Shown in pieces: positions 1,864-64,000 of a DNA stretch of 64,000 bases. How positions within the stretch are numbered: the stretch's first letter is position 1; each line of letters begins with the position of its first letter. Source of the DNA: Macrostomum lignano (lineage: Eukaryota); NCBI GenBank assembly GCA_002269645.1, contig NIVC01001206.1:171850-235849 (forward strand), read 5' to 3'. The position numbers and the translations under genes are program-made. The notes beneath the pieces are model-generated. The model was not told the DNA's origin. It made no database searches and worked only from the letters and a program-made list of their open reading frames with translations.

Positions 1864-2030
1864 ATAATTTTTAACAAGACCATCAACAAGAAGCTCAGAG
1901 ATCGCATTGTCTATGGCATTTCCATTTTCAGCCTTGCTCGAACGCACCGAGTTCAATGCAGTTTTCGCCAGGAAAGCGAATTGGGGTAAAACAGACGTCA
2001 AAAGGCAACAATCGCATTGTCAGAATAATC

Positions 2031-5000: not shown

Positions 5001-5564
5001 CTTCTCTTTTTCCTCTCCTGCCAGGGCTCGGACCAGATCACCAGCCTCTTCATCGTCTACTCCGGTCGCGTCACCAGCTCGGCCACCCCGGGGCCCAACC
5101 GGCCAAGTCAGCTGCTGGACACGCACGAGCCCGGCGAGTTGGTTGGCACCGAGGCGATGCTCCGACAGGGTCTGCGATCGACCTCCGCGTACGCAGCCTC
5201 AGCTACGGAGCTCATCGTTGTGCCCGTTGACAAGCTGGAAGCGGTAGTCGGCGCCACGGTGTCCGAGCTCCTGGCTCGAGACCAGGACGTCGCGCTCGCC
5301 CTTTTCCGTCGGATCTTCCAGCCGGGCGTGCCGCTGCCGCGCGACGGCTGGCGGCCTGGCGTGGAGCCGCAGCGGCTTCAGCAGCTGCAGTCGGCAGCGG
5401 CGGTCACGGCGGCGGCGGCGGCGGAAAGCTGCGGCAGGCGGCTGCGCGGTCGGCACCTGCGCGTTGAAGCCGAGATTCTTCGCGAATCGGAAGGCGGAGG
5501 AGGCCGGATGAGCTGCGAGTACTCGGCTGGCGCCCCGTGGACTGACGATAAGCAAATTTCTTAG
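2031..5564 (+). CDS. Multi cyclic-nucleotide-binding (CNB/CAP-ED) domain protein, ~997 aa, five tandem CNB-homology domains; join(2031-2783,3017-4276,4346-4786,5025-5564)
   Basis: Three phase-0 GT-AG introns join the ORF blocks in frame. Repeated CNB beta-roll signature: LPAGKRLIRERDPIKQCYLVYKGQL; YEAGYVLQEEGSVPDRLFCILQGGV; LQKNDCLYAEG..YVYVVLEGEL; FSDGDLMVTEE..IYFLQSGEAEV; QPNQSIFLEGS..LFIVYSGRV..GELVGTEAML..RSTSAYA. Start could alternatively be ATG 1956. Confidence 0.85.
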
Positions 5565-13655: not shown

Positions 13656-15395
13656 ATCCAAAGCGCAGCCTCTCCGACTTACCTCAAGCAAGGAGTTGCT
13701 AAAGCAGCTCATGTAATTAGTGGACTCCCACACGACCCCGCGACTAGTCTTGGTCTCCCAGGTGCCGTCCTCCGTGCATTGGATTGAAAAAGTGTCTGCC
13801 GGGTGCAAAAAAGGGGATATTAGGCGTCTGAAATGCACTGTATACGAGTACAAAATAATATTGTACATCCTACTGAACAGGTTTTGATTAGCTTTCAATT
13901 TGATAGACCAGATATTGCGTGCAGCAACTACTCTGGCATTAGAGGCAAAAAGTTGAATCATTCAGCTGGCAATGAGGCGACTTTCTCCCGGCAGGATGTG
14001 AACAAAGCAGATGGTCACGAACTTTCGAGCGGCACTATTTGATTTGAGATTTGTTAAAAGTGCAACTTGGCTTGTTGCACTGCCATCGGACGGGGCAGAG
14101 TGTTTCTTGCTCGAACTGGCATACAAACCCTTAACTGTGGTTTTGGAACATTCGTCCCAATTAGTCACCCATCCTGGCCACCCTCAAGTTCCATCAAAGT
14201 ACACCCACAAACAAGTTTGTCTCAGTAATGTGTAGTTTTTAATGTCGTCTTATAAGCTCATCCACTCATCCTCATCCTAATCAGCTAACAAGCACACTCG
14301 CCAGGAAGCACACTCCCCAGGAAGCACACTCTCCAGGAAGCACACTCCCCAGAAAGCACACTCTCCAGCAAGCACACTCTCAAGGAAGCACACTCTCCAG
14401 GAAGTACACTCCCCAGGAAGCACACTCTCCAGGAAGCACACTCCCAGGAAGCACACTCCCAGGAAGCATACTATCCAGGAAGCACACTCTCCAGGAAGCA
14501 CACTCTCCAGGAAGCACTCTCTCCAGGAAGCACACTTTCCAGGAAGCACACTCTCCAGGAAGCACACTCTCCAGGAAGAACACTCTCCAGGAAGTACACT
14601 CTCCAGGAAGCACACTCTCCAGGAAGCACACTCTCCAGGAAGCACACTCTCCAGGAAGCACACTCTCCAGGAAGTACACTCCCCAAGAAGCACACTCTCC
14701 AGGAAGCACACTCCCAGGAAGCACACTCCCAGGAAGCACACTCTCCAGCAAGCACACTCTCCAGGAAGCATACTCTCCAGGAAGCACACTCTCTAGGAAG
14801 CACACTCGCCCCAGTTTTCACTCGGCAGTCACTCACTGTTCGGATTGGCGCTGGGCAGGTAGGTCGGGCAGCCGTACTTAGTCGAGGATCCGCTAGCCGT
14901 TGCGTTGATGCAGTGCAGGCCGTCCCAGGTGGCCGGGCACATCGCTCCGGCAGCGGCCTCGGCGGAGGCCTCCGCCCCAGTCGCCAGCTGAGCCCGGCAG
15001 CAGGCCACAGCAGCCAGGCAGCAGCGGCGCAGCATGGTTGAGCAGTCCTCAACCTGGGGCGCGTGCTTCGGCTCGAGCCGAACAAATGCCGAGCAGACGT
15101 CCGCAGAGAACTGAGTCTCGTTGAAGAATCTGAGCTGCTTGGAAGTTTGCAGCGCGTACAGCACCCTGTCCGCTCTGGTGTACATGAACTGAAAGCAGTG
15201 CACGCAGCTGTATTTTCTGAATATTCTCGGCAGCAGTCGGGTGCCATTGTGGGCTCGGCACGTCGGCTGCGGCGGCTGCGGCGGCTGCGACGGCGAGGTT
15301 AGATCTGTCGATCGACGGTCGACGGTCGACGAAGGAGCCGCGGCCGAAGCCAGTAGACAGCAGGCGAGAAGCGCGGCCAGGCACTGGCGTGGCAT
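7175..15395 (-). CDS. Class B1 (secretin/calcitonin/PDF/PTH-receptor family) GPCR, ~579 aa; complement join(15395-14837,13795-13683,12495-12404,12321-12132,11914-11764,11366-11291,11018-10952,10877-10795,8890-8710,7402-7175)
   Basis: Signal peptide; hormone-receptor domain CPATWDGLHC..CPTY..QCTEDGTW..TNYMSC; TM2 RVVIHVNLF; TM3 MFMWIFVEGFYLH..YYVLGWG; ECL2 RCW; TM5 LNVIFFINILRILLKKL; TM6 KATCILVPLFGLQW; TM7 SHGAIVATVFCFANNEV. All nine introns are GT-AG and phase-consistent (1740 nt). Subfamily cannot be assigned by eye. Confidence 0.93.
8010..8272 (-). mobile_element. hAT/Charlie-like terminus plus CT-rich tract; dispersed family copy B
   Basis: Minus strand reads CAGGGTTCGGCAGACTCCGGCCCGCGGGTCACGTGCAGCCCACAAAGCCTGTCTATCCGGCCCGC, then a CT-rich run. 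Confidence 0.55.
8417..8666. mobile_element. Foldback-like palindrome: two inverted arrays of a 16-bp unit
   Basis: (TATCACAAACCCGAAA)n at ~8417-8525 faces (TTTCGGGTTTGTGATA)n at ~8572-8666 across a ~45-bp spacer. Confidence 0.75.
9240..10520. repeat. 8-bp satellite (TTCTAAGA/TTCTAAGC) with ~379-bp higher-order period
   Basis: Diagnostic AAGAAC variant in the same context ends at 9440, 9819 and 10198. Confidence 0.9.
12950..13655. repeat. 24-bp minisatellite (TTAGTGGCTTGGTGTCTGTGCGTC) followed by (GTCT)n
   Basis: Direct inspection; lies in intron 2 of the class B GPCR. Confidence 0.9.
14290..14810. repeat. 16-bp minisatellite (CAGGAAGCACACTCTC)
   Basis: Direct inspection; intron 1 of the class B GPCR, ending ~25 bp from the donor. 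Confidence 0.9.
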
Positions 15396-32870: not shown

Positions 32871-33289
32871 CAAACAAAGCACAGGATCTGTTGTGCCAAT
32901 TTTTTCCGTTTGCGTCAGCAAAACAGAGGCGCAATGTACTTTACGCAAAGCCCGGCCTGCACTGGCGTAATTATGTCCGTAATTTTATCAGATTTAATTA
33001 AATAAGTCAGTAAAACTGGACCCGAAGACTGCAGTCCCCACCCTTTGATCTCGGCGCTTTTGCACTGGGCAAGCCGCGTAAACATCTTTCTTTAAAAAGT
33101 CACACTTGCACCAGAAAGAACTGGGGAAGGAAAAGCCGGAGGGGGGCTGCACTTTGAAAACCGCACTGAAAATCTAATAAAAAGCCTTTCTAAAACGAGT
33201 TTGATAATTTGACCAACATCCTTGTTTGTAGAGTTCTCAACAACAACAAAGTACGCATCCCCGTATGTTAGGTTACATTTTGAGCAGGG

Positions 33290-33800
33290 CGCGTCAGATG
33301 GCTGAACGGGCCCTGAAAGGTGAGCAGCAGGACGTCCTGAACAGGTTGGGGGCAGTAGCCCTCGGCCCGGATCACGTGGTCTGCCAGTCGAAGTCGCCAC
33401 CGATGCAGGATGGTGGGCGGGCGCTGCAGCTTGGCCCGATCGTACAGGGCCTCGGTCCCGACGCTCTCGTCAGCTCGAAAGGCCGCACGGAGCAGCTCTG
33501 AGTGCGCCGAGTCCAACTGCCGCTCCAGTGTAACCGTCAGCGTCCACGTCTCGGCGTTGTATAGCAGGACCACCGCCTGCCACAGCCGAGCCCTCTGGCG
33601 GTCGGGCAGCGCTTTGGACTGGAGGACGGCTCGGATCGAACGGAAGGCCGCCCAGGCAAGTCCTTTGCAAGACCTCAACCAGCCTGTCAATCTGGACGAG
33701 GACAGGAGGGCGGAGTCGTCGGCGTAGCCAAGCACGCTCAGACGCTTTTCGCTGTGGCGGCGCAGCAGGAAGCCGTCGTCAGCCGAGGGGAGTGCGGTCC
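33290..33800 (-). mobile_element. RTE-clade-like non-LTR retrotransposon RT fragment with internal deletion
   Basis: ORF 33268-33825: LGYADDSALL catalytic motif fused almost directly to the post-RT block LLYNAETWTL...RLRLADHVIR typical of RTE/CR1-group elements. Confidence 0.75.
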
Positions 33801-33864
33801 GTGAAATATGGAAATTGTGGTGCATATTCGCTCCCGAGCTCTGTCTGCCCCTCAGCTACGTCTT

Positions 33865-34587: not shown

Positions 34588-46607
<12,020 letters not shown>

Positions 46608-46657
46608 AGGATGATGGAGGAGATGAATCAGCTTGATGCTGACCCAACCGACCTTTT

Positions 46658-47548
46658 GATGATAACCCATCTGACCCTTAGATGATAACCCATCTGACCC
46701 TTAGATGATAACCCATCTGACCCTTAGATGATAACCCATCTGACCCTTAGATGATAACCCATCTGACCCTTAGATGATAACCCATCTGACCCTTAGATGA
46801 TAACCCATCTGACCTTTAGATGATGACTCATCTGACCCTTAGATGATAACCCATCTGACCCTTAGATGATAACCCATCTGACCCTTAGATGATAACCCAT
46901 CTGACCCTTAGATGATAACCCATCTGACCCTTAGATGATAACCCATCTGACCATTAGATGATGACCCATCTGACCCTTAGATGATAACCCATCTGACCCT
47001 TAGATGATGACCCATCTGACCCTTAGATGATAACCCATCTGACCCTTAGATGATGACCCATCTGACCCTTAGATGATAACCCATCTGACCTTTAGATGAT
47101 AACCCATCTGACCTTTAGATGATAACCCATCTGACCCTTAGATGATAACCCATCTGACCTTTAGATGATGACCCATCTGACCCTTAGATGATAACCCATC
47201 TGACCTTTAGATGATGACCCATCTGACCCTTAGATGATAACCCATCTGACCCTTAGATGATAACCCATCTGACCCTTAGATGATAACCCATCTGACCATT
47301 AGATGATGACCCATCTGACCCTTAGATGATAACCCATCTGACCCTTAGATGATAACCCATCTGACCATTAGATGATAACCCATCTGACCCTTAGATGATA
47401 ACCCATCTGACCCTTAGGTGATGACTCGTCTGAATCTTAGGTGATTACTCATCTGACCCTTAGGTGATGACTCATCTGACCCTTAGGTGATGACTCATCT
47501 GACCCTTAGGTGATGACTCGTCTGAATCTTAGGTGATGACTCATCTGA
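46658..47548. repeat. 23-bp minisatellite (GATAACCCATCTGACCCTTAGAT), ~38 copies, just 3' of the GPCR stop
   Basis: Direct inspection. Confidence 0.93.
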
Positions 47549-47929
47549 CTGTTAGGCGGTCAAGGTGTTGATTATTTTTTCGTTGTTCTGTCGTTTGGTC
47601 TGCATCCAGCGTGTAACAGAAGCAAAGTTCTTTTTTAAAAAATCATCTTGCCCAAAACGTTTCTGTGCAATTGTTCTCACAGGAGCATTAATCCTGAAAA
47701 ATTAGTATTGCTTCTTCGCAAATTATTATTTGCGAAATATTATTCGCAAATCAGCATTGTTAAACCATTTTTCTAACTCGCGCTTGCTTTAAAATAATTG
47801 ATTTTTTTAGCATTAGTAGCTGTTTAAATGTGCTGTGAGAGGGCTGTGAGTCTTGATGGAAAATTCGGAATAGTTTGAAATTTGAACTCTTCTGAATCAT
47901 AGACCCGCTTTAGACACAGAACCGGAGCC

Positions 47930-48340
47930 AAATTCCGAAACACCTATTAAATTCCGAAACAGAAACCGAAACTATTCCGAATCCGAAACCGAAACTATTC
48001 CGAATCCGAAACCGAAACTATTCCGAATCCGAAACCGAAACTATTCCGAATCCGAAACCGAAACTATTCCGAATCCGAAACCGAAACTATTCCGAATCCG
48101 AATCCGTTCAACTATTCCGAATCCGAAACTCCTCTTCAATTCCGAATCCGAATCCGAAACCCTTCTCGAATTACGAATCCGAAACCGAAACTATTTCGAA
48201 TCCGAATCCGAAACTATTCCAAATCCGAAACCCTCTCGAATTCCGAATCCGAAACCGAAACTATTTCGAATCCGAATCCGAAACTATTCCAAATCCGAAA
48301 CCCTCTCGAATTCCGAATCCGAAACTATCCCGAACCTAAT
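47930..48340. repeat. CCGAAT/CCGAAA-based 23-bp repeat (CCGAAACCGAAACTATTCCGAAT) and derivatives
   Basis: Direct inspection. Confidence 0.85.
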
Positions 48341-49014
48341 CACTCATCGGAACTGAATGACTCACCGTGAGCTCTAACCAGTTATTAATCTGCGGTATTG
48401 TTGTTGTGTTTCACAATTTTTTTAATTAACTTTGTCCAACCCAAACAACCTGCAATTCTTGCAAGTCGTGCTTCAAGCCAGCGGTGATTGACCCCCCTGA
48501 ACACTGTGGCAATGAGGATTGCCTGCCCCAAGGCAAAAATTGTTGTCTGCTCGCTCGGATAATAAACAGGAGGCTGTCCTTGGCATGTCCGCTTCGCTTA
48601 ATTGAAGAGACTGTAGCAAATGATATTTACGAAAAATGCTAATCTCGTCTTATATATTGTATTGCTTGTGTCAGAAGCAGTCTGTGTTGATACGCTCGAA
48701 GATATTTATTCTGCTAAATATATACCCCTATTGGACCTTCGCTAGCGAGGCACTCGTGACGTTTTATGTAGTGACAAATCTTATATTAGCTGAATGCTTC
48801 ATCTTAACTGCTTTTTCATCTATAATATATAATGGGCTACGCGCTGCGTCCCCCATAGTTGCCATCTCTGAGCTAACGGGATGAAATATCAGTAACCCGC
48901 ATCAGTCCTCTGCTCAGGCTGACTCCACACTTCTACTCTCATGGTGCTCGGGCGGTGGCAACTGCAGGAGACAGTTTTTGAGGTCTTTCGGACTAGAAGC
49001 ATTCAATATCTTTC

Positions 49015-49235
<221 letters not shown>

Positions 49236-50211
49236 TAGTGCCCGTTCATCTATTGTCTATTTTGTAGCTAGATGTTGTCTACAAGAGTTGCCTACGGGCA
49301 TGATAAGCAACTACTGACGTACCAGAAGGGTATTTTTGGCAGCATCAACTCAACTGAGTTGTTGTTTATCTGTAAAATCCTTCAGTTATACTGTTACTGT
49401 ATACTGTTTATACTGTTTTATGTCGCAATGCCCCTGTCTCCTTCAAAAGCCACCCCTGCAGAGCCCACAATCCCCAGTCGCAGTCAAAGACTTCCGCTGT
49501 AGGTGTCCAAACTAATGAGACGCAGTCTCTGAGTTGCTTTCAGCATCGCCCGCCAAACAATTGCAGTTGTTTTTCCCCGGGCCATTGCTAAGCGAAAGTT
49601 CGCCGCCGCGAGCTCAGAGACGGCTGAGAGGGAATTAAACGGCGGCTGGATTACAGGAGAGAGAGGAGGACAATGCATAGGCAGAGCTGACAGCCAGCAG
49701 GACAGGGACTGCATAATAATAAGGCATTAAAGCAGGAAGTCAGTACAATGCCCGACTGCGGTAGCTGCTCACACGCGCAAGAGTGCATGGGACACACAGC
49801 TCGGCTTGTGTGCCTGCAGAGCGAATCCTCAGATTGAAGGCTTATCTTAGCCTGCTATCAAAGCCGCAGCTGTAGCCCCCCCCCCCTCCCAACGCTTTAG
49901 CTGCTGCTTTCGGCGCGGTCCCTTCTTGTCAAACCCAGAAATGTCAGCTAGGCACGCAAGCGCCTGGCGGACTTATCCGCTAGGCCTCTGCATTCGCTTA
50001 CTGCTAAAAACCGTTTCTGCTTACTGATTCGTTTTCTGCTCGATTCTTCTCCAATTCTGCCTGTCAGTGATTGTTCTCCTACCGGCTTTTTGGCCTATTC
50101 CACTGGGTGATTGGTCTCACAAGAGACCGCTGATTTTGCACTGTGTCCTGGGGTGCAATGGGATATGAGGAAACTCAAAATTTCAATATAAGTCTCGAAA
50201 TGTTTTCAGCA

Positions 50212-51750
<1,539 letters not shown>

Positions 51751-52479
51751 GTCAGCAGTCAGTCAGGACGCGTCGCGTGTCGGGCCGCCCGAGCAGTGTA
51801 CCGATCCGGACGCGTGTCTGTGACGCGAGAAGGACGCGCTCAATGAAGCTGTCTTTCAGTTTCGTCGAGTCTTCATTTTCCGCCTTGTCTAAAACCCCTC
51901 CTGCTGCGGTGCCCCCGGCCTTGACCCGGCAGTCTTTGCTGCTCCAAAGCTCACGCGAGCTTTCGATAAAAAAGCGGGAGAAGCAGGAAAAATATCCCTT
52001 AGCCCTTAGCATAAGCTCGGCGCAGATCCCCTTTGCCAAGTTCTCCCCACATGAGGCTCGGAGGCGGCACTCGTTGAGCTTCTCATCTCGTAGGAAACCC
52101 TCGAGCAGAAAATTCTGAGCACTGAGACGCTGGCCGCCGGGCGCTAGTCTGTGAAAGTTTCGAATTTTCGATCGAAAACAGAAGACATTTTTATTTACCT
52201 TTCATTCAGCTGCATTGAAGCAAATAAGGAAATCGAGTTCAAGCAACAACTGCATACACTTGTTGATAAAAAGCAGGCAAATGTCAGCTTGCAGGGGTAC
52301 AAAATCTTTCAGTGGACAGAATTAAATAAATCAGTGGAATAGATGAGATGCGTTGAGCAGTAAGAATCTAATCTGTTATCAAATCGTTGATTTGATCCAT
52401 AATATTGTCCATAAGCTTAGTCATGCTTAATCCTATTCACAATAATCCGATCCATTATCGTGTCAATGATCCAATTCAT

Positions 52480-52755
52480 GAGTTAATCGATAATTCAATC
52501 AATCGATACTTCAATCAATCGACAATTCAATCAATCGATAATCCAATCAATCGATAATCCAATCAATCAACAATTCAATCATTAAATAATTCAATCAATC
52601 AATAATTCAATCAATCAATAATTCAATCAATCGATACTTCGATCAATCGATACTTCGATCAATCGATACTTCAATCAATCGATAATTCAATCAATCGATA
52701 GCTCAATCAATCGATAATTCAATAAATCGATAATTCAATCAATCAATAATTCAAT
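52480..52755. repeat. 16-bp AT-rich repeat (AATCAATCGATAATTC)
   Basis: Direct inspection. Confidence 0.85.
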
Positions 52756-52813
52756 TAAAGCTAGACAAAAAAGCTAACGGATAATCCTATGGATAATCCA
52801 GCCGATAAGCCGT

Positions 52814-55800
52814 TCAGTCGATCCGATTAGCCCTGATCCGGCCAGCCGGCCAGCCAGTCAGCAGGCAGACGCCGGCGCCGGCCCGCCGCAGCGCCAATCC
52901 GGGCGCCGCCTCCCAGGCGCCGGCCGCCGGGTCCAGCCGCTCGGCGCTGCCCAAGTAAGCGACGCCGTCGTGGCCTCCCACCGCGTACAGGCGGCCCCAG
53001 AGGGCCACCGCGCCGAGGCCGCCGCGGGCGACGCTCATGGGCGGCAAGTCGAGCCAGCGGTTGCAGCGCGGGTCGAACCGCTCGACGCTCGCCACTGCGC
53101 CGCGATCGTCGAAGCCGCCAAGGACGCAGACGCCGCGGCCGGCCTCGTCAGCAGCCGCCGCCGCTCCGGCCCTCGGCCGCCGCATGGAGGCCGCCGGCAG
53201 CCACATGTTCTTCACCGGGTCGTACAGTTCGCAGGTGGACAGAGCGGCCGAGGAGTCGTTGCCGCCGCAGACCAGCAGGCGGCTGCCGGAGTCCACGGGG
53301 GCGCCAGCGGAGCCGCCGCGAGGAGTTTGAGTTGGCGCCACCGGCGCCCAGCTGGGAAATATGGAGAGAGAAATTCTCGCATTGTTACTCAGGTGAGTAG
53401 TATATGCTGATGCATAGAAATCAATAACCAAATTTGTTGACACGTCAAGAGGTAAAGATGAGCATAAATATGAAACCATAGAATAGACGATAGATCACCC
53501 AGCAGACCCGATAGATCACCCAGCAGACCCGATAGATCACCCAGCAGACCCGATAGATCACCCAGCAGACCGGATAGATCCCCCATACGACTGTCCCGAT
53601 GCCCCCCGCAGCGGAGTCACCATCGCGTCGGACAGCCTCAGCGCGATCACCGCCCTGAGCAGCGGCCCCCTGACGCAGACCGACCCGGCTGCAGCCGAAT
53701 GCTGGAAACTCCTCCTGCAGCTCGGTCGGTTGGACCGCAAGGTAAAGTTCTGCTGGATACCGGCGCACTGCGGCCTCTCCGGCAATGAGGCGGCAGACAG
53801 GGCGGCGGCCAGGGCGGCGGACCTCGACCAGCGACAAGTCCCGCTCCCGCTCAGTGCCGCCAGGACGGCGACACGCCACTCCAGACGCGCTCTTGATGAA
53901 CTGGCGGTCCCGACCCACTGGAAGCCACCGAGCCACCTCCCACGCCGCCTACAAGTTATTGTCAACCAGCTTAGAGCCGGCGCCAGCACCATCAACCGCA
54001 GCACTAGGTTCAGACTCGGCATCGACACCTCGCCCGACTGCCTCGACTGCGGTGCGCTGGATACGGTTCAGCACGTCCTATTCGAGTGCCCCAGAGGCGA
54101 CCGCCTACGGGCAGCTCAAGGGCTCGCACCCGAGGACCTGATGGGGTCCCCGGATGCCATTATCGGGCTCACTCGCAGCATGGGGCGTCTGCCCCCCTCC
54201 AGATCGGCCGGTCCGCACACGGAGGCGCCTTGAAGAAGAAGAAGAAGAAGAAGATCCCCCATAGACCCGAAAGATCACCCAGCAGACCCGATAGATCCCC
54301 CATAGACCCGATAGATCACCCACCAGACCGGATAGATCACCCCACAGACCCGATAGATCACCCACAGACCCGATAGACCCCCCAGCAGACCCGATAGACC
54401 CCCCCATAGACCCTAAAGATCACCCAGCAGACCCTAAAGATCACCCAGCAGACCCGATAGATCACCCAGCAGACCCAATAGATCACCCAGCAGACCCGAT
54501 AGATCTCCCAGCAGACCCGATAGATCACCCAGCAGACGCACCGGTCAGCAGCCGGGTCGTAGCGCTCCACAGTTTCAAAGCAGGCTGCATCGTCGAGACC
54601 TCCAACGGCGAACAGGCAGCCGCTGAGGGACACCAGGGCGAGGCCTCGACGAGCTGTGGACATCCGCGCCACCCGGCGCCAGCTGTTCTCCTCCGGCAGG
54701 TAGGCCTCCGCCGTGGCCAGGTGCGAATCGCCGTCGTGACCGCCCACTGCGTAGACAAGGCCTGCGGGCCGGCGGAGGGAGGCGGTGGGAAAACGCCATG
54801 CATTTCCAATATTGAATCTAAGTGCCTCCGCCCTCGGAATCCTCCGCCCTCGGAATCCTCCGCCCTCGGAATCCTCCACCCTCGGAATCCTCCACCCTCG
54901 GAATCCTCCGCCCTCGGAATCCTCCGCCCTCGGAATCCTCCGCCCTCGGAATCCTCCGCCCTCGGAATCCTCCACCCTCGGAATCCTCCGCCCTCGGAAT
55001 CCTCCGCCCTCGGAATCCTCCGCCCTCAGAATCCTCCGCCCTCAGAATCCTCCGCCCTCGGAATCCTCCGCCCTCGGAATCCTCCGCCCTCGGAATCCTC
55101 CGCCCTCGGAATCCTCCGCCCTCGGAATCCTCCGCCCTCGGAATCCTCCGCCCTCGGAATCCTCCGCCCTCGGAATCCTCCGCCCTCGGAATCCTCCGCC
55201 CTCGGAATCCTCCGCCCTCGGAATCCTCCGCCCTCGGAATCCTCCGCCCTCGGAATCCTCCGCCCTCGGAATCCTCCGCCCTCGAATCCTCCGCCCTCGG
55301 AATCCTCCGCCCTCGGAATCCTCCGCCCTCGGAATCCTCCGCCCTCGGAATCCTCCGCCCTCGGAATCCTCCGCCCTCGGAATCCTCCGCCCTCGGAATC
55401 CTCCGCCCTCGGAATCCTCCGCCCTCGGAATCCTCCGCCCTCGGAAACCTCCGCCCTCGGAATCCTCCGCCCTCGGAATCCTCCACCCTCGGAATCCTCC
55501 GCCCCCAAAATCCTCCGCCCCCAAAATCCTCCGCCCCTAAATCCGCCATCCGCTTTTTATAGCTCGTATATCTCCCTCTCCTCCAACTCCATCCTCTTTC
55601 ATCTCCCTTCTCCGCCCCTTTTTCGCCCTCCTCTCCGCCCCTTCCGCAAATCACCGTCAGTCACAGCCAGGCCGCAATGCCGTCGTCTCGTTCGCATTGG
55701 TTGAACCTAAAAACGAATTTAACGATGCTTTAATACCAGTAAATTACTATTAGTAGTGCGCAGAGAACGCGTAGTGAATAAAATATCGCGCTCTCGAACC

Positions 55801-58800
55801 CCTCTCGCCTTCTCACCGGGAACCAGGCGTCCTCTAGCAGGTCGAAAACCTCCGCGCTTCGGTGGGGCTCAGCCGTCAGTCCGCGGCCGCCGACACAAAA
55901 GATGCTGCCGGCGTAAGACATCCGCGGCCTTTGCTACTCTGCCGACAGGCTGCTCGACACTGGCGCGTGCTGCTGCTGCTGCTGCTGCTGCTGCTTTCGC
56001 TGAATAGGCGAGCCAATGCGAGCGCCATCGAGCTGGAAGGCGCAGGCCTGCAGCACCAGCTCAGTGCAGTTGCGCCGGCCCTGAATCAGCGGGTCCCGGC
56101 TGACTGTGTCGGTCAGGTACTCCGCCGGCAGCTGGGTCAGCCGGATGTGCGCCAGCAGCCTGCAGGGGTCGGGCACAGCTTCCTTCTAGCTGGACTTTCT
56201 CTCCCCGATTTGCTTTCGTCTGGCCTTCCAATCCGCGGCGTCAATCCTCCGTTTTCCAGTCTCTGCCCCTTCAATCCTCCGTTTTCCAGTCTCTGCCCCT
56301 TCAATCCTCCGTTTTCTACTCTCCGCCCCTTCAATCCTCCGTTTTCCAGTCTCTGCCCCTTCAATCCTCCGTTTTCTACTCTCCGCCCCTTCAATCCTCC
56401 GTTTTCCAGTCTCTGCCCCTTCAATCCTCCGTTTTCTACTCTCCGCCCCTTCAATCCTCCGTTTTCCAGTCTCTGCCCCTTCAATCCTCCGTTTTCTACT
56501 CTCCGCCCCTTCAATCCTCCGCTTTCCAGTCTCTGCCCCTTCAATCCTCCGTTTTCTATTCTCCGCCCCTTCAATCCTCCGTTTTCCAGTCTCTGCCCCT
56601 TCAATCCTCCGTTTTCTACTCTCCGCCCCTTCAATCCTCCGCTTTCCAGTCTCTGCCCCTTTAATCCTTCCTTTTTCTACTCTCCGCCCCTTCAATCCTC
56701 CGTTTTCTATTCTCCGCCCCTCCAATCCTCCGTTTTCTACTCTCCGCCCCTTCAATCCTCCGTTTTCTACTCTCCGCCCCTTCAATCCTCCGTTTTCCCG
56801 TCTCTGCCCCTTTAATCCTCCGTTTTCTACTCTCCGCCCCTTCAATCCTCCGCTTTCCAGTCTCTGCCCCTTCAATCCTCCGTTTTCTATTCTCCGCCCC
56901 TCCAATCCTCCGTTTTCTACTCTCCGCCCCTCCAATCCTCTGTTTTCTACTCTCCGCCCCTCCAATCCTGTTTTCTACTCTCTGCCCCTTTAATCCTCCG
57001 TTTTCTACTCTCCGCCCCTCTAATCCTGTTTTCTACTCTCTGCCCCTCCAATCCTGTTTTCTACTCTCTGCCCCATCAATCCTCCGTTTTCTACTCTCCG
57101 CCCCTCCAATCCTGTTTTCTACTCTCCGCCCCTCCAATCTTCCGCCCTCTCGATCGTCCGCCCCCTTCCGCCCCTTTTAACCCTCTGCCCCTTAAACCCT
57201 CCGCCCCTTCCTCCCCTTCAATCCTCCACCCCTTCGATCCTCCGCCCCCTTCCAATCCCTCAATCATCCGCCCCTTCAACCCTCCGCCCCTGTCAATCCT
57301 CTGCCCCTTCCGCCCCTTCAATCCTCTGCCCCTTCAATCCTCTGCCCCTTCCGCCCCTTCAATCCTCCACCCCTTCAATCCTCCCCCTCTTCAATCCTCC
57401 GCCCCTTCAATCCTCCACCCCTTCAATCCTCCACCCCTTCGATCCTCCGCCCCCTTCCAATCCCTCAATCATCCGCCCCTTCAACCCTCCGCCCCTGTCA
57501 ATCCTCTGCCCCTTCCGCCCCTTCAATCCTCTGCCCCTTCCGCCCCTTCAATCCTCTGCCCCTTCCGCCCCTTCAATCCTCCACCCCTTCAATCCTCCGC
57601 CCCTTCAATCCTCCGCCCCTTCAATCCTCCGCCCCTTCAATCCTCCGCCCCTTCAATCCCCGCCCCTTCAATCCTCCGCCCCTTCAATCCTCCGCCCCTT
57701 CAATCCTCCGCCCCTTCAATCCTCCGCCCCTTCAATCCTCCGCCCCTTCAATCCTCCGCCCCTTCAATCCTCCGCCCCTTCAATCCTCCGCCTTTTACTT
57801 TTTCTGCCTCTTCTCCGCTCATTCCATTCTCCAACCCATCAAATCCCTTCCGCCCCCAGAACACCTTCACCCCTGAGGCTCAAGCCCGCCATCGGCACCC
57901 CAGCGCTAACCAGTTTATCACCGCCTTCCGCTCCGATGCGCTCGCCATCATCCGGCAGCTTCCGGCGCAAAGCCAGTCGACCCGACCTGATCCCCTTTTG
58001 CCAATCAGGTTGGCTCGGCCCCTGACCCAGGCCTCAGCTGCTGGGATGCGGATGGCAAAGCTGAAGGCAGGACGGATTTTCCAGACAGACAGCCAGCAGC
58101 TCCCAGGAGTTGAGGGGAAGGGAAGGGCTGGCAAAGTCTGCCAACGGTAGGGAGAGGGGATCACCGCCCTAATTGCTCCCGGATTAGAGCCTAGGATGCT
58201 TGGAAGAGCAAAACCTAGCTAGGGCTTGAAGGGATACAGCCTCAGCCTTCAGTTCCAAAAAGGGGATATCGGAGAACCGAAAGATCCCCACCCAGTGAGA
58301 TTGCAGCTCTCATTTCTCTCCCGAAGCCCCCTGGCTCAGCCGGGCTTCAGTTCCCCCCACCTCAGAGTGTCCCCCCATCTGTCGATCTGGCGGGCGGGCA
58401 GGGGAAGCCGATGGCGACCCCCGCACCTTTGCACCCCGAGGGCATCGATTAAGGGCGCTAGTGACGGCGGGCCGGGAAGGCGAGGCGCAAAAAAATAAGC
58501 AAAAAATCAAAGATCAGGCCGGCTTAAAGTTCACTGCCCTAGGCACCTGGGATTCTAATGAGCCAGAGTTTACTTTGTTGGAGAAAACTATCGATTTCAA
58601 AGTTGCTTTTGATGCATTCGGCGTTCTTTAAAGTTGCAAATGCTTCCTCCAAACCAATCTATAAATCTTTGTAATTTTGCGAGACTTTTCTAACGCCGAG
58701 TCATACTTTTCCTATGCTGCAGAATGAGAAGAAGTAGAGTAAGAGAGGCTGCTTTTAAACGCTTCATCCTCCCTTCCCCATGTCAGGGGGGTTTCTGCTC

Positions 58801-59075
58801 GACTGAGTATTGACTCAACGAGTGCCGGCTTAAAAGCAAGCGAGAGATTCTTACGCTGGGCGAGGCTTTGTGGAAAACAGCTCTTCGGATTGATTGCCCG
58901 AGGAGAACCCCCGGATCGTGAAGCGGCGAGGCCCGCTACCGTGATTTCCGCGTTTGATGATTGAGGACTGGTGAAAGAACATCTTCTGCTTTGACACAGA
59001 TATAGGTCTGTCAATAGATAGATTAGATAGATAGATTAGATAGATAGATTAGATAGATAGATTAGATAGATAGAT

Positions 59076-59121
<46 letters not shown>

Positions 59122-59148
59122 CATAGATACATAGATAGATAGATAGAT

Positions 59149-59188
<40 letters not shown>

Positions 59189-59189
59189 G

Positions 59190-59281
<92 letters not shown>

Positions 59282-59282
59282 C

Positions 59283-59329
<47 letters not shown>

Positions 59330-59350
59330 CATAGATGGATAGATAGATAC

Positions 59351-59417
<67 letters not shown>

Positions 59418-62400
59418 CGAGTTAATCAGAAACCTGCAGTTCCCATACATCTTACTGGCTTAGAACTAGGATTCTCTGCCCTGTCTGTGCTCAAGAGCTT
59501 CGGGCAAATCCTGCATCTAAAGCAGCAATTCTCTCCAGTTTTATGGGCTCATCTTTCTCTTTTGAATTCGCCCCCGAGGGGAAATCAGTGAAGCCAAGAG
59601 ACACGCTCAGGGAAGGAGCGAGGAAATTGCAAAATTGGTTTGCCAGCCAGCAACTTCCCAGCCATTTCTCTTCCGTTCCGCAATTCTCCCCATCTCGCAT
59701 TTATCTTCTTAAGTCCGCGCCTGCTCTTTCTTGTTTTAATCTTCCGCCCTCAAGATTGAGCTACTGCTCGGCGCGAATTGCCCCTGCTTGATAAGTAAGG
59801 AAAGCCAGTTGGCAGTTTACTTCACTCTTCGTTTGCCTCGATTTTTTTCACGCACTGGATAATCCATGTAGCAGTGAATGGAGAGCTGTGAAGGGAGAGC
59901 AGGAAATGGTGAGCAGAGAAGGGAGAGCAGAGAAGGGAGAGCAGAGAATGGTGAGCAGAGAATGGTGAGCAGAGAAGGGAGAGCAGAGAATGGAGAGCAG
60001 AGAATGGAGAGCAGAGAAGGGAGAGCAGAGAAGGGAGAGCAGAGAATGGTGAGCAGAGAATGGTGAACAGAGAAGGGAGAGCAGAGAAGGGAGAGCAGAG
60101 AATGGTGAGCAGAGAATGGAGAGCAGAGAAGGGAGAGCAGTGAAAGGAGAGCAGAGAATGGAGAGCAGAGAATGGAGAGCAAAGAATGGAGAGCAGAGAA
60201 GGGAGAGCAGAGAAGGGAGAGCAGAGAATGGAGAGCAGAGAATGGAGAGAAGAGAAGGGAGAGCAGTGAAGGGAGAGCAGAGAAAGGAGAGCAGAGAATG
60301 GAGAGCAGAGAAGGGAGAGCAGTGAAGGGAGAGCAGAGAAAGGAGAGCAGAGAAGGGAGAGCAGAGAATGGAGAGCAGAGAATGGAGAGCAGAGAATGGA
60401 GAGCAGAGAAGGGAGAGCAGAGAATGGAGAGCAGAGAATGGTGAGCAGAGAAGGGAGAGCAGAGAATGGAGAGCGGAGAGATAGGAGAGCAGAGAAGGGA
60501 GAGCAGAGAATGGAGAGCAGAGAATGGTGAGCAGAGAATGGTGAGCAGAGAATGGTGAGCAGAGAGATAGGAGAGCAGGCAAGGGAGAGTAAAGGAAGGG
60601 GGCAGATAGGAGACACTGGAGGAGAGAGTTATATGAGTAATTGAGAAGTTAGTTAGAGCAGGAGAGTCAAGAGGCGAGTATCAGCGAACAATCCTGCTGG
60701 ACAATGGTTACCTGTAATGCTGTGAATTTCAGCATCCATTCCCTCGAGTGGCCATCATCCATGGCTCAGCTAAATGAAGGCTTTTGTTCTCATGGTCAGG
60801 TAAAAAACTGACTCTCTCCTGCGGGAAGGCTGCAGCCGCCCGCACACATCCTACGCGGCCATCTAATTAGCAGAGCCAGGCAATTTTCCTCAGGCCTAAT
60901 TTCAGCTATAGCGGGAAATTGCCCGCCCTCACCCGGCTGTGTTTTTCCTCCGTTTTGCTCACGCCAAATTCCTTGCTCTGGTTGCCCGCCGAGAGGATGG
61001 AGGAGACGAGAGGCTGAGGCGGACCAGGCGGTGACTTAGGGATTTGGGAGGCTTCGGCATATAGCTTAATGCATTTCATTTCATACCGGAATACCGGCTG
61101 CCGGATTTCTCCGCCTGGCAGTCGGTTCACTGCATGAATATTTCACAATACCTCCTCCAAGGCCCGCCTTCTTTCTGCTTTTGCCCCCCACCCACCCCCT
61201 GTGCCTCTTCTATCACGGTAGTTCTAGTTAGTTATTTTCCTAATAGCAAAGGCAGGGCCTGACCAGCGCAAGGCATTGTGTGTGTGGGGCTTCAATGACA
61301 GTCGGTCAGGCAGATCTTGTTACTAATCAATGCCAGCTCTCTTTGAAGGATGCAATTTCATTAACCAAGCAGCCATTCTATACAATTTTACCGATTCCCC
61401 ATTCGTTGCATCCTGCATCCGTTTCGGTTAAATTGAAGTGCTTCTGCTTTTAGTTCAGTCAGAGTTGCGTCTGCTTCTGCCCACCTTCTCTCCGTTTTTC
61501 CTGTTCGATTTCCCCTTCAACAGCTCTCTCCATTCACCTAATGCTCCAACTTCCCTCTCTCTCTACTGTCTCCCCTCTCAGTCTCCCTCTCTCTCTACTG
61601 TCTCCCCTCCCAGTCTCCCTCTCTCTCTACTGTCTCCCCTCCCAGTCTCCCTCTCTCTCTACTGTCTCCCTTCTCAGTCTCCCTCTCTCTCTACTGTCTC
61701 CCCTCTCAGTCTCCCTCTCGCTCTACTGTCTCCCCTCCCAGTCCCCCTCTCTCTCTCTACTCTTCCCAGTCTCCCTCTCTCTCTACTGTCTCTCCTCCCC
61801 CTCCCCCCTCTCTCTCTACCGTCTCACCTCCCTCTCCCCCATTCTAATTTCGGGAAGAGTGCCATACACCAAAACGGTATCTCTTCACGTTCCTTTAAAT
61901 TCTCTTCTCAACCATTTTAACAGGCCTTCTCCCTCGTAATGGGCTCTCCCTCACTTATGAAAGCCTCTCAATGCAAGCAAGCCAGCCCATAATAGTGCAG
62001 GAGTCAATTTCACCTGCCTAATGTAGCAGGCTAGCAAAAATGGAACTCTGCGAAGACAGCGTGGCATTGCGCTGGCTGTCCGGGATTACCTGGGATCAGG
62101 GGAGAGAGCCTCAGTGCAACCAGAGCACACAAATTGCTGCTAGGAGCAATACAGCTCATAAAAATATTGCACTATAATTCAAGGGAAATATTGCGGGTGA
62201 GACCTGCATAGAGAGACATAATGTGACTTACAACAGCTGAATTTGTCTGGCAATTAGGGAGCTGTAGTATCCCAGAAATTAGCAGTGCAGCTAATTTATC
62301 TCTACTCCACTCTACTCCACTCTACTCCATAACATATTGGCTAGACTAGCAATCCAGCAAGTTGGCTAGATTAGCAATCCAGCAAGTTGGCTAGACTAGC

Positions 62401-63697
62401 AATCCAGCGAGTTGGCTAGACTAGCAATCCAGCGAGTTGGCTAGACTAGCAATCCAGCGAGTTGGCTAGACTAGCAATCCAGCAAGTTGGCTAGACTAGC
62501 AATCCAGCAAGTTGGCTAGACTAGCAATCCAGCACCCTCCGGTCGCACCCACCTGCCAGCCAGCTCATCCCTCTCGCCCGGCCGCGCCCGCAGCCACCGC
62601 ATGAGGCCGGAAAACGCCTGCACCTCGTCGGCGACGTCCAGCCGCTCGGATCGCAGCGCTGCCTCCATCGCCTCGGCCGACAGTTCGGCGAACTCCGGCG
62701 CCGCTGACAGCTCGTTGAAGCCGCCGATCAACCGGGCATCGGCGCTGGCCAGCAGGTCGCGCCGGCCCCACCGCTCGGCGGCTGCCCGCGCGGCGACAAT
62801 ATCTGCCGGCCTCGCCAGCAGGTGGTTGGCGATGAAGAGGTCGCAGCAGCGGGCCGCCGGCTCGAGCTGCAGAGCGCAGGCGGCGGCGAGCAGCGGCAGG
62901 GCGGTGTCGCCCGTCACCCGCAGGCAGCCGGTGTAGCAGAAGTCAACCAAGCTGGTCAGGACAGCCACGGAGGCTTCAGCTTCCGGCGGAAGCGTCATCA
63001 CATTGGATGCCGGCGCAGCTGCCGAAGCTGTCGAGCGGAATAGCGGGCTCCAGCAGGCCAGCACGAGGCGATGGCACGGCACGTCGCCGGCATCCGCCGC
63101 TGCTCCCGCCTCCGATTCGTCCGCTGGCTGCCGCATTGAAGACGACCGCAGCGTCAGGTCGCAGAGGCGGCCGGCCCGTCGCATCGCCCAGAGACTGCGG
63201 AAGCCGAGGTCGCTGTGGCCGGCCAGGCTGCACACTGCGGAGCCGAGCTTCGGGTCGAAGCGGACCAGCAGGCCGGCTGCGGCGGCGGCTGTGGAGGCGC
63301 CAGCCGAAGGGGAAGGCGGCTGCAGTGCCGGCGCTTGTCCTGCTGCTGCTGGCACTGGGCCTTCCAGGTGGACGGACACCTGCGACGCACCGATCGAAGG
63401 AGTGAAGAGCTGCCTGTTTATTTGAGAACCTACTCGTGATTTGTGATGAATTCATTTTGTTATCTCATTTTATATTTTTTCCCACATGCGGTTGAGTAGC
63501 GATACCTGCATGCAGACACTCACACGGGGTGTACAGCGGGCAACCTTGTTGGTTCGATGCTCGATTCTGCACGTCGTCTAATCCAATAACCACACAATAA
63601 GCAAAACTATCATAATTAAGCAGATTTACCTGTCAGGGAGATGCTGCTGATGCTGACTGATGCTCTGATGTTGGCATGGATGAGCCGCCTCCGACAT
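52814..63697 (-). CDS. KLHL8: Kelch-like protein 8 orthologue (BTB-BACK-6xKelch, Cul3 adaptor) with an internal in-frame TAG at 55936-55934; complement join(63697-63630?,63566-63524?,63379-62553,56159-55817,55706-55655,54761-54542,53351-52814)
   Basis: BTB: RRAGRLCDLTL..CHRLVLACWSPLF..LVDFCYTG. BACK: VADEVQAFSGLMRW..LLAHIRL. The Kelch blades follow the KLHL8 pattern in order as I recall it (FCVGGRG, RRRHCG, YAVGGHDG..HL, RRGLAL..GGLDD..CF, TPRGG, GGND, GGFDD, GGHDG.AYL, RAGAGV). The last five exons are phase-consistent; the two 5' micro-exons are tentative. Confidence 0.85.
53490..54540. repeat. 21-bp minisatellite (CACCCAGCAGACCCGATAGAT), interrupted by a LINE insertion
   Basis: Arrays at ~53490-53587 and 54252-54540. 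Confidence 0.9.
53588..54251 (+). mobile_element. 5'-truncated I-group-like non-LTR retrotransposon 3' end (RNase H + CCHC), 664 bp
   Basis: Open frame 53589-54233: TIASDSLSAITAL..VKFCWIPAHCGLSGNEAAD (RNase H) and CLDC-x7-H-x4-C; (GAA)7 tail; TSD AGATCCCCCATA at 53576-53587 and 54252-54263. Confidence 0.92.
54826..55545. repeat. 16-bp minisatellite (GGAATCCTCCGCCCTC)
   Basis: Direct inspection; shares the AATCCTCCGCCC core with 1287-1812 and 56240-57790. Confidence 0.93.
56240..57790. repeat. 30-bp minisatellite (TCAATCCTCCGTTTTCTACTCTCCGCCCCT) grading into a 16-bp unit (TCAATCCTCCGCCCCT)
   Basis: Direct inspection; same family as the interior of the MITE at 1225-1863. Confidence 0.92.
59013..59420. 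repeat. (GATA)n microsatellite
   Basis: Direct inspection. Confidence 0.95.
59875..60590. repeat. 14-bp purine-rich repeat (GGAGAGCAGAGAAT/AAG)
   Basis: Direct inspection. Confidence 0.9.
61550..61830. repeat. ~32-bp CT-rich minisatellite
   Basis: CTCTCTCTACTGTCTCCCCTC(C/T)CAGTCTCC units. Confidence 0.8.
62340..62535. repeat. 25-bp minisatellite (GGCTAGACTAGCAATCCAGCAAGTT), ~8 copies
   Basis: Direct inspection; starts ~17 bp into the intron after the BTB exon. Confidence 0.9.
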
Positions 63698-64000
63698 GGC
63701 TCTCTTGATTTATTTCCTTTGTCTCTCAACTCTGTCTCCCTCCCTGTAAAATAGTTCTGTTTTAATCACCGCAGCAGCTGAGGCGGACTGGGATTGGATA
63801 GGACAATTTTTTGCCGGTTTTAAGGGGACGGCAGTGAGGGAGAGAGGGGTGGGGGGCACAGGGAGCAGCAGTACGCGGACGGCTGCAGGCAATGGCTGGA
63901 GCGCTGATGAGGCCAATTACACTAGGGGGAAGAGTGCAGGGGCTGGGATCGGACAGCTCAGCAGAGGTGCGCTGTTGGGGACTGTGGGGATTTTTACAAC

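What the first reader, a model, noticed from the sequence alone, without database searches (positions are those of the whole stretch)
55817..56159. KLHL8 split by a single TAG at the BACK/Kelch boundary: readthrough, stop-restart, or null allele
Seen: ...poly-Q-HAPVSSSLSAE-TAG-CAA AGG CCG CGG-ATG-SYAGSIFCVGGRG, all in one frame. The downstream exons, splice sites and all six blades are intact. Only an implausible 27-nt GT-AG intron would remove the stop. The stop is 117 nt upstream of the next junction (an NMD configuration). ORF1 would be a BTB-BACK protein (~387 aa with the tentative 5' exons). The ATG 12 nt downstream opens a 304-aa ORF holding the whole propeller. Established: a C after the stop (UAG-CAR) favours readthrough, Drosophila kelch is a classic readthrough gene, and KLHL8/KEL-8 is a Cul3 adaptor for rapsyn. 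Inference: a switch between substrate-less Cul3 decoy, free propeller and full adaptor, or simply a recent nonsense mutation or consensus error.
Basis: partly seen in the sequence, partly recalled or inferred. Interest (0 to 1): 0.75.

Follow-up and report, generated by a model that had tools for sequence, protein, structure and literature searches.

The report
Premature stop in one KLHL8-like copy
A flatworm-type KLHL8-like gene is cut by a single TAG between its two halves, but a nearly identical copy elsewhere has glutamine there, so this is most likely an ordinary recent nonsense change or base-call error.

Summary
On the minus strand, a six-exon BTB-BACK-Kelch (KLHL8-like) gene reads in one frame with canonical GT-AG introns. 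Its only defect is an in-frame TAG at 55936-55934, in the BACK/Kelch linker, 12 nt before an ATG that opens a 304-aa ORF covering the propeller.

The decisive new evidence is P0030 (UniParc UPI0007A2054C), a database protein model from the same locus in another assembly, haplotype or duplicate. It is about 99% identical in the true exons and reads ...SSLSAE-Q-QRPRMSYAG.... That is Gln where the window has TAG, so the change is a single CAG-to-TAG (C-to-T) step. The stop is therefore private to this copy and is not a conserved recoding signal.

- **Age of the lesion:** the Kelch part is as well conserved as that of the Macrostomum lignano relative, and codon bias is the same on both sides of the stop. 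The lesion is recent.
- **Readthrough features:** UAG-CAA matches only the first half of the CAR-YYA readthrough motif. The downstream hairpin is marginal.
- **Restart features:** the ATG context is weak and there is no TURBS motif.
- **Splicing:** no plausible intron removes the stop.

Most likely this is a real nonsense allele or young pseudogene copy. A consensus error comes second. Programmed readthrough or a functional split is unsupported. Interest is low.

The parts
63630..63697 (-). Probable first coding exon: ATG (63697-63695) ...GACAG, then donor GTAAAT. It encodes MSEAAHPCQHQSISQHQQHLPD plus 2 nt.
   Evidence: Read directly from the sequence. Phase 2 joins in frame to the acceptor aaacag|G at 63413. 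This is inferred, with no homology support, because the N-terminus is not conserved.
62553..63413 (-). Exon 1: BTB domain and most of the BACK domain. Ends at donor CAG|GTGGGT.
   Evidence: Pfam BTB E=3.7e-11 and BACK E=1.7e-17. Splice sites. 253 of 255 residues are identical to P0030.
55817..56159 (-). Exon 2: end of BACK, the linker with a (CAG)8 poly-Q run, the in-frame TAG, and the first strands of Kelch blade 1.
   Evidence: It is homologous to part of one uninterrupted exon of the M. lignano relative.
55934..55936 (-). The in-frame TAG, codon 351 of the model that starts at 63379. Context is GAG TAG CAA AGG CCG CGG ATG.
   Evidence: The near-identical protein P0030 has Gln here (SAE-Q-QRPRM).
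55919..55921 (-). In-frame ATG 12 nt after the stop. It opens the 304-aa Kelch-only ORF. The context CGG ATG T is weak.
55869..55926 (-). Predicted hairpin starting 7 nt 3' of the TAG (-29.9 kcal/mol for the 69-nt stretch that was folded).
   Evidence: z = -1.77, and 10 of 200 shuffles fold as well. The M. lignano equivalent, which has no stop, forms a similar weaker hairpin (z +0.45). The 144-nt and 605-nt contexts are not unusually structured.
55655..55706 (-). 52-nt microexon encoding VQPMRTRRRHCGLAVTD plus the first base of Gly. This is the first strand of blade 2.
   Evidence: Acceptor tttttag|GTTCAA and donor ACG|GTGATT. It matches W-F-x-V-x-x-M-x-T-R-R-R-H-V-G-V in the homologues and is present in P0030. 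The phase-1 intron after ...G is shared with M. lignano.
54542..54761 (-). Exon 3: Kelch blades 2-3.
   Evidence: 74 of 74 residues are identical to P0030.
52814..53351 (-). Exon 4: Kelch blades 4-6 and the closing strand. The stop codon is TGA.
   Evidence: Pfam Kelch_1 matches 6 stretches, E=5.5e-55.

Best explanation
The TAG is a recent single-base nonsense change, CAG (Gln) to TAG (C to T). It lies in the poorly conserved, poly-Q-containing linker of one copy of a KLHL8-like Cul3-adaptor gene in a flatworm-type genome. That copy could be an allele, a haplotype or a recent duplicate.

It is a loss-of-function or hypomorphic lesion, not a programmed signal. Translation would end after a 384-aa BTB-BACK product. 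The mRNA, with three exon junctions downstream of the stop, is a likely NMD target. At most a small basal leak through UAG-C would give full-length protein.

- **Shown:** the stop; the otherwise intact gene; Gln at this codon in a ~99%-identical sequence from the same locus.
- **Inferred:** that the base is real rather than a consensus error; NMD; loss of function.
For: 1. Exhaustive HMMER search found P0030 (UniParc UPI0007A2054C). It is an over-extended gene model collinear with the window from beyond 64000 down to about 45600. In the true exons it is ~99% identical and reads SSLSAE-Q-QRPRMSYAGSVF.
2. The other differences between the two copies are ordinary variation: 7 versus 8 Gln in the CAG run, W/R, R/W, I/V, S/A.
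3. There is no other lesion. The model is one frame of 1980 nt with all introns GT-AG. GC3 is 0.82 upstream and 0.81 downstream of the stop, against 0.48 for the window. The Kelch part is 44-55% identical to outgroups, like that of the M. lignano relative at 49-50%. The stop is therefore young.
4. The TAG lies in a linker segment that is lineage-specific relative to M. lignano.
5. The Macrostomum literature reports extensive duplicated blocks at 95% identity or more, and separately assembled haplotypes. In that setting redundant copies with private lesions are expected (PMC5730564, PMC10468722).
Against: - No reads could be examined, so a consensus error cannot be separated from a real variant.
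- The species of the window and of P0030 is not established by any tool result. A macrostomid flatworm is only inferred, from a best named hit at 45-48% identity (45% by BLASTP; 47.6% in the alignment) and one shared intron position.
- P0030 has its own ~100-aa insert and a frame jump in exon 4. An intact sister copy is therefore not demonstrated.
- The complete absence of secondary damage is also what a functional, translated downstream ORF would show.
- UAG followed by CAA is a relatively leaky context.
Confidence: 0.6

Rival explanations
1. Assembly or consensus base error. The organism has CAG at this codon and the TAG exists only in this assembly.
For: An independent sequence of the same locus has Gln. 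Everything else in the gene is intact. Published Macrostomum long-read assemblies have QV of about 36-43, so occasional wrong bases are expected.
Against: The site is not in a homopolymer or inside the CAG run; it lies 33 nt downstream of it. Long-read consensus errors are mostly indels, by general knowledge. The two copies also differ at several other positions, so they are truly different sequences, and a real C-to-T variant is just as easy. For a 2-kb CDS at QV 40, the expected number of error-made stops is about 0.001-0.003 by my own arithmetic, using the 2.6% stop-creating fraction.
Confidence: 0.2
2. Programmed or exploited recoding. A leaky UAG-CAA, or termination followed by restart at the ATG 12 nt downstream, yields a mix of BTB-BACK decoy, Kelch-only propeller and full-length adaptor.
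For: - C at +4 and CAA after UAG match the first half of the UAG-CAR-YYA readthrough motif (PMC2754532).
- A -29.9 kcal/mol hairpin starts 7 nt 3' of the stop, at a spacing like SL1 of Drosophila kelch.
- The in-frame ATG is close by.
- The downstream ORF is undamaged.
Against: - The stop is not conserved. The ~99%-identical copy has Gln, and M. lignano and all other homologues are continuous here.
- The second triplet AGG matches none of YYA.
- The hairpin is marginal (z -1.77; 10 of 200 shuffles) and arises from GC-rich codons of a conserved peptide. The stop-less M. lignano sequence folds similarly. Larger contexts are not structured.
- The ATG context CGG-ATG-T is weak. ORF1 is at least 350 codons. 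No UGGGA/TURBS motif lies within 120 nt upstream.
- Drosophila kelch readthrough is a UGA after the complete BTB-Kelch protein, so it is not a precedent for a split between the domains.
Confidence: 0.06
3. The stop is removed from the mRNA, either by a tiny in-frame intron (27 nt, CCA|GTGTCG...GAGTAG|CAA) or by A-to-I editing of UAG to UIG (Trp).
For: A GT...AG pair of 27 nt, a multiple of three, spans the stop. UAG is the preferred ADAR triplet, by general knowledge.
Against: - The candidates (18, 27, 30 and 33 nt) have poor donors and no pyrimidine tract.
- The real introns in the window that I delimited are 70 nt or longer. Mean Macrostomum introns are 0.5-1.4 kb.
- P0030 translates the 27 nt (VSSSLSAEQ) as coding sequence, and the M. 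lignano relative has no intron anywhere in its linker.
- No extended duplex surrounds the TAG in the 144-nt or 605-nt folds.
Confidence: 0.02

Closest known systems
KLHL8 / C. elegans KEL-8 type BTB-BACK-Kelch Cul3 substrate adaptors (nearest named relative: Macrostomum lignano BOX15_Mlig026592g1)
   Same: BTB, BACK and six Kelch repeats in the canonical order. The best named hits are KLHL8 of Branchiostoma and Gopherus, plus a JGI 'kelch-like protein 8'. The phase-1 intron after ...SANG is shared with M. lignano.
   Different: - Identity is only 45-48% to the M. lignano protein and about 39% to chordate KLHL8.
- There are low-complexity inserts: an Ala/Glu-rich loop in the BTB, poly-Q in the linker, and an Ala run in blade 5.
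- There are two extra introns, including one that creates a 52-nt microexon.
- The ORF is interrupted by TAG.
Ordinary premature-termination (nonsense) alleles and young unitary or duplicate pseudogenes
   Same: A single stop in an otherwise intact, conserved CDS, with a sense codon (Gln) in a near-identical copy. It is a C-to-T change of CAG, and the stop lies more than 50 nt upstream of exon junctions.
   Different: Nothing distinguishes it. Only the reality of the base and its zygosity are untested.
Drosophila kelch stop-codon readthrough (ORF1-UGA-ORF2)
   Same: A kelch-family Cul3 adaptor gene. A stop is followed by an open frame, and a predicted stem-loop starts 7-8 nt 3' of the stop.
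   Different: In Drosophila the stop is UGA. It follows the complete BTB-Kelch protein, is conserved across species and adds a novel extension. Here a UAG splits the ancestral protein between BACK and Kelch and is absent from the closest relative.
TMV-type UAG-CAR-YYA leaky termination
   Same: UAG followed by CAA.
   Different: The second triplet is AGG, not YYA (PMC2754532). The context is cellular and there is no conservation.

Membership tests
BTB-BACK-Kelch (KLHL) protein, KLHL8-like | N-terminal BTB/POZ domain | tested here: met
   Pfam PF00651, E=3.7e-11, residues 97-185 of the ORF1 query.
BTB-BACK-Kelch (KLHL) protein, KLHL8-like | BACK domain following the BTB | tested here: met
   Pfam PF07707, E=1.7e-17, covering 99 of 103 profile positions and spanning the exon 1/exon 2 junction.
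BTB-BACK-Kelch (KLHL) protein, KLHL8-like | Six Kelch repeats forming a propeller | tested here: met
   Pfam Kelch_1 matches 6 stretches, E=5.5e-55. All GG / W / R repeat landmarks are kept in the alignment. Matches to KLHL20, KLHL17, KLHL2 and KEAP1 Kelch domains in the PDB reach E of about 1e-57 to 1e-62.
BTB-BACK-Kelch (KLHL) protein, KLHL8-like | One uninterrupted ORF joining the BTB-BACK and Kelch parts | tested here: not met
   In-frame TAG at 55936-55934.
BTB-BACK-Kelch (KLHL) protein, KLHL8-like | Orthology to KLHL8 rather than to another KLHL | tested here: inconclusive
   The best named hits are KLHL8, but no phylogeny was made. Identity is 39% to chordate KLHL8 and 45-48% to an unnamed M. 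lignano protein.
Programmed stop-codon readthrough gene | The stop codon is conserved in relatives | tested here: not met
   P0030, ~99% identical in the exons, has Gln. All other homologues are continuous.
Programmed stop-codon readthrough gene | Leaky 3' context (UAG-CAR-YYA or an equivalent) | tested here: inconclusive
   The context is UAG CAA AGG. CAR is met and YYA is not (PMC2754532).
Programmed stop-codon readthrough gene | A stimulatory 3' RNA structure supported beyond chance or by covariation | tested here: inconclusive
   The hairpin is -29.9 kcal/mol, z = -1.77, and 10 of 200 shuffles fold as well. The stop-less M. lignano sequence folds similarly. The 144-nt context has z +1.49.
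Programmed stop-codon readthrough gene | Ribosomes or peptides crossing the stop | not testable with these tools
   No reads, Ribo-seq or MS data were available.
Termination-reinitiation (stop-restart) | A short upstream ORF or a TURBS-like 18S-complementary motif (UGGGA) upstream, with stop and start overlapping or adjacent | tested here: not met
   ORF1 is 384 codons. There is no TGGGA in the 120 nt upstream. The ATG is 12 nt downstream in the weak context CGG-ATG-T.
Nonsense allele / young pseudogene copy | A premature stop in a conserved CDS where a close copy has a sense codon one mutation away | tested here: met
   TAG against Gln (CAG is the only Gln codon one step from TAG).
Nonsense allele / young pseudogene copy | The base is real in the DNA of the organism (reads), with known zygosity or copy | not testable with these tools
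   Window ORFs are not on record in the contig collection. The DNA encoding P0030 is not on record either.
Nonsense allele / young pseudogene copy | Further decay: frameshifts, lost splice sites, relaxed codon bias | tested here: not met
   None was found. The lesion is recent, or it is not a pseudogene.

The most novel reading that the evidence does not exclude
The TAG is real and fixed in this gene copy, and it is tolerated because UAG-CAA plus the 3' hairpin lets a useful fraction of ribosomes read through. Alternatively the Kelch-only ORF is expressed from the nearby ATG, for example after spliced-leader trans-splicing. One locus would then deliver a substrate-less Cul3-binding BTB-BACK protein together with small amounts of full adaptor or free propeller. 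That would be a nascent domain-splitting recoding event caught soon after its origin.
Probability: 0.05. Interest if true: 0.6.

Novelty: already known. Interest (0 to 1): 0.12.

Why it matters
As found, it matters little. It is one premature stop in one copy of a Cul3-adaptor gene, and it mainly warns annotators. The only database model of this locus is a 2208-aa fusion of three genes with translated introns, and the gene with the stop appears unannotated.

It would matter only if the stop proved real, fixed and translated through. Animal readthrough cases that split an ancestral two-domain protein, rather than extend it, are essentially undescribed.

Tried and rejected
- **Exact-ORF look-ups.** I looked up the two window ORFs flanking or downstream of the stop to find independent contigs or reads. 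Neither is on record. The DNA encoding P0030 is not on record either.
- **Word-index protein searches.** Searches missed the 87%-identical P0030. Only the exhaustive HMMER scan found it. The word-index tool should not be taken as proof that close relatives are absent.
- **Species identification via a neighbouring gene.** The cNMP-binding gene gave no hit at all.
- **Species identification via shared repeats.** Comparison with a M. lignano locus found only (GTTA)n and (GTCT)n microsatellites in common. No M. lignano spliced-leader sequence is in the window.
- **Rfam scan of the window.** Nothing was found.
- **My first gene model.** It lacked a strand of blade 2 and had a phase conflict at exon 3. 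I first considered a deletion or pseudogene, then rejected that on finding the 52-nt microexon.
- **Tiny-intron removal of the stop.** Rejected.
- **ADAR-type duplex around the TAG.** Not seen.
- **Coding versus non-coding divergence between the window and P0030.** The counts are too small to use: 7 differences in 591 aa against 3 in 150 aa.
Full report
**1. Observation**

The gene lies on the minus strand. Exon 2 (56159-55817) translates as LLAHIRLTQLPAEYL...CAFQLDGARIGSPIQRK-Q8-HAPVSSSLSAE-*-QRPR-M-SYAGSIFCVGGRGLTAEPHRSAEVFDLLEDAWFP.

- The stop is TAG at 55936-55934, and the next in-frame ATG is at 55921-55919.
- The stop ends 117 nt before the donor CCG|GTGAGA.
- All details in the finding are therefore correct.

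**2. Gene model**

Pfam finds BTB and BACK domains upstream of the stop and six Kelch repeats downstream of it.

- My first model lacked nine residues of blade 2 and had a phase conflict at exon 3.
- Comparison with the genomic locus of the best named homologue resolved this. That homologue is Macrostomum lignano BOX15_Mlig026592g1 (P0001, locus L001).
- In M. lignano one exon runs from LLHCVRL... to ...HVGLVSANG|.
- In the window the same stretch is split by an extra 110-nt intron. This leaves a 52-nt microexon at 55706-55655, encoding VQPMRTRRRHCGLAVTD plus one base.
- With the microexon, five exons give 1980 nt in a single frame with one internal stop. The four introns (6393, 110, 893 and 1190 nt) are all GT-AG and are packed with tandem repeats.
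- Exon 1 has no ATG. A probable 68-nt first coding exon runs from the ATG at 63697 to donor CAG|GTAAAT after 63630. It joins in frame to an acceptor at 63413.
- That gives a 384-aa ORF1, or 693 aa if the stop were read through. This exon is inferred only.

**3. What the stop interrupts**

In the alignment with homologues the TAG lies in the BACK-Kelch linker, one residue before the conserved RPR-x-S/T-Y-A-G motif that leads into blade 1.

- Relative to M. lignano, the window's linker carries an extra poly-Q run, (CAG)8, plus HAPVSSSLSAE*Q.
- In M. lignano the linker lies inside one uninterrupted exon, and P0030 translates the nine codons of the 27-nt candidate as VSSSLSAEQ. They are coding sequence, not an intron.
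- The only in-frame GT-AG candidates over the stop are 18, 27, 30 and 33 nt, with poor donors and no pyrimidine tract.
- Real introns in the window that I delimited are 70 nt or longer. Published mean intron lengths in Macrostomum are 0.5-1.4 kb.

**4. The decisive comparison**

The word-index protein searches found nothing closer than 45-48% identity. The exhaustive HMMER scan of 1.84 billion representatives found P0030 at 87% identity overall.

P0030 is an over-extended gene model, collinear with the window from beyond 64000 down to about 45600. It strings together:
- an ALG1-like N-terminus from outside the window;
- this gene;
- translated intron repeats;
- intergenic sequence at 52147-51803;
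- the antisense strand of the GPCR exon at 46034-45657.

So it is the same locus in another assembly, haplotype or recent duplicate. In the true exons it is about 99% identical to the window's protein:

| Segment | Identity to P0030 |
|---|---|
| Exon 1 | 253 of 255 |
| Exon 2 + microexon | 129 of 131, plus one Gln fewer in the CAG run |
| Exon 3 | 74 of 74 |

At the stop P0030 reads ...SSLSAE-Q-QRPRMSYAGSVFCVGG.

- A gene model cannot translate a stop, so that genome has a Gln codon there.
- CAG is the only Gln codon one step from TAG, so the window's stop is a C-to-T change of CAG.
- The TAG is therefore private to the window's copy.
- That clause is not shown. P0030 has a ~100-aa insert with no counterpart in the window, and a frame jump in exon 4. 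These may be real, or may be artefacts of an error-rich assembly and a permissive predictor.

**5. Age of the lesion**

- Nothing else in the gene is broken.
- GC3 is 0.82 before and 0.81 after the stop, against a window GC of 0.48.
- The region after the stop is 44-55% identical to the homologues, the same range as the M. lignano protein shows to the same outgroups (49-50%).
- The Kelch domain was under selection until very recently. The stop is young, or it is not real.

**6. Tests of the recoding ideas**

*Context.* The sequence is UAG CAA AGG. The first triplet fits the UAG-CAR-YYA motif defined for TMV-type readthrough, and the second triplet fits none of it (PMC2754532).

*Structure.*
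- A hairpin starts 7 nt after the stop, at -29.9 kcal/mol. Its z-score is only -1.77, and 10 of 200 shuffles fold as well.
- The stop-less M. lignano sequence, which codes the same peptide, forms a similar hairpin.
- The 144-nt and 605-nt contexts are no more structured than shuffles (z +1.49 and -0.26). No long duplex that could guide A-to-I editing surrounds the TAG.

*Restart.*
- The ATG context CGG-ATG-T is weak.
- ORF1 is long.
- There is no UGGGA motif in the 120 nt upstream.

*Precedent.* In Drosophila kelch, ORF1 is the complete Cul3 adaptor. The stop is UGA, and readthrough adds a separate ORF2 (bioRxiv 10.1101/2020.06.22.165522). That is a different architecture from a stop between BACK and Kelch.

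**7. Most likely mechanism**

| Explanation | Confidence |
|---|---|
| Recent nonsense substitution in one allele, haplotype or duplicate copy | ~0.6 |
| Consensus base error in this assembly | ~0.2 |
| Programmed or exploited readthrough or restart | ~0.06 |
| Removal of the stop by a micro-intron or by editing | ~0.02 |

- If the base is real, translation ends after a 384-aa BTB-BACK protein.
- The mRNA has three exon junctions downstream of the stop and is a plausible NMD substrate. This is an inference, and NMD rules in flatworms were not examined.
- Basal leak at UAG-C could give traces of full-length protein.
- The genome background makes a redundant, damaged copy unsurprising. M. lignano has 180 Mb of duplicated blocks at 95% identity or more, and other Macrostomum assemblies contained separately assembled haplotypes (PMC5730564, PMC10468722).
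- The window's species is inferred, not shown. The grounds are the best named hit (45% by BLASTP, 47.6% in the alignment), one shared intron position, and a genome rich in tandem repeats.

**8. Comparison and novelty**

The gene is a KLHL8-like BTB-BACK-Kelch protein. The domain tests are met, while KLHL8 orthology rests only on best named hits. The interruption is an ordinary premature stop. Nothing here is new in kind.

**9. Verdict**

Interest is low (0.12). Reads at one base would settle real variant against error.

Noticed in passing
window 45600-64000, compared with protein P0030: The only near-identical database protein (UniParc UPI0007A2054C, 2208 aa) is a chimeric gene model. It fuses an ALG1-like glycosyltransferase C-terminus, this KLHL8-like gene, translated intronic tandem repeats, intergenic sequence and the antisense strand of a GPCR exon. 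It also has a ~100-aa insert and a frame jump in the last Kelch exon that are absent from the window.
   Followed up: partly
window 55655-55706 (-): A 52-nt microexon was created by a lineage-specific 110-nt intron inside what is a single exon in the M. lignano relative. The following phase-1 intron position is shared between the two.
   Followed up: yes
window 63360-63700 (-): Exon 1 has no ATG in its open frame. A 68-nt upstream exon (ATG at 63697, donor GTAAAT) fits in frame. Separately, the AG at 63381-63380 sits exactly on a codon boundary. In a flatworm whose spliced leader ends in AUG, as the M. lignano SL does (PMC8629364), trans-splicing there would also supply an in-frame start.
   Followed up: partly
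window 52500-62534: Every intron of the gene, and its 3' flank, is filled with long tandem arrays: periods 16, 21, 25, 30 and 48, (ATAG)n about 100 copies, and a 14-mer of about 51 copies. Several translate as long open frames on both strands, which misleads ORF-based gene callers.
   Followed up: partly
window 53730-54233 (+) and 33268-33825 (-): These are retrotransposon remnants. One ORF inside intron 4 of the KLHL8-like gene has an RNase H end and a zf-RVT motif (Pfam E=1.3e-4 and 8.8e-3). A second RT-like ORF (YADD motif) has no Pfam hit.
   Followed up: partly
window 1956-5564 (+): This multi-exon gene has at least three cyclic-nucleotide-binding domains (Pfam PF00027, E down to 2.6e-14) and short introns of about 70-230 nt. 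Its 388-aa core found no homologue at all in the word-index search of 5.8 billion proteins.
   Followed up: partly
window 37068-37478 (+) and 45693-46607 (+); 14829-15395 (-): A rhodopsin-family GPCR is split over two exons about 8 kb apart (7tm_1 E=7e-11 and 2e-16), with a poly-Q/Gly/Ser-rich third loop. A separate ORF has a signal-peptide-like start and a weak class-B hormone-receptor (HRM) domain (E=3e-4).
   Followed up: no
window 55960-55983 (-): The (CAG)8 run encoding poly-Q in the linker is 8 units here and 7 in P0030. It is a length-polymorphic coding microsatellite 33 nt upstream of the stop.
   Followed up: yes
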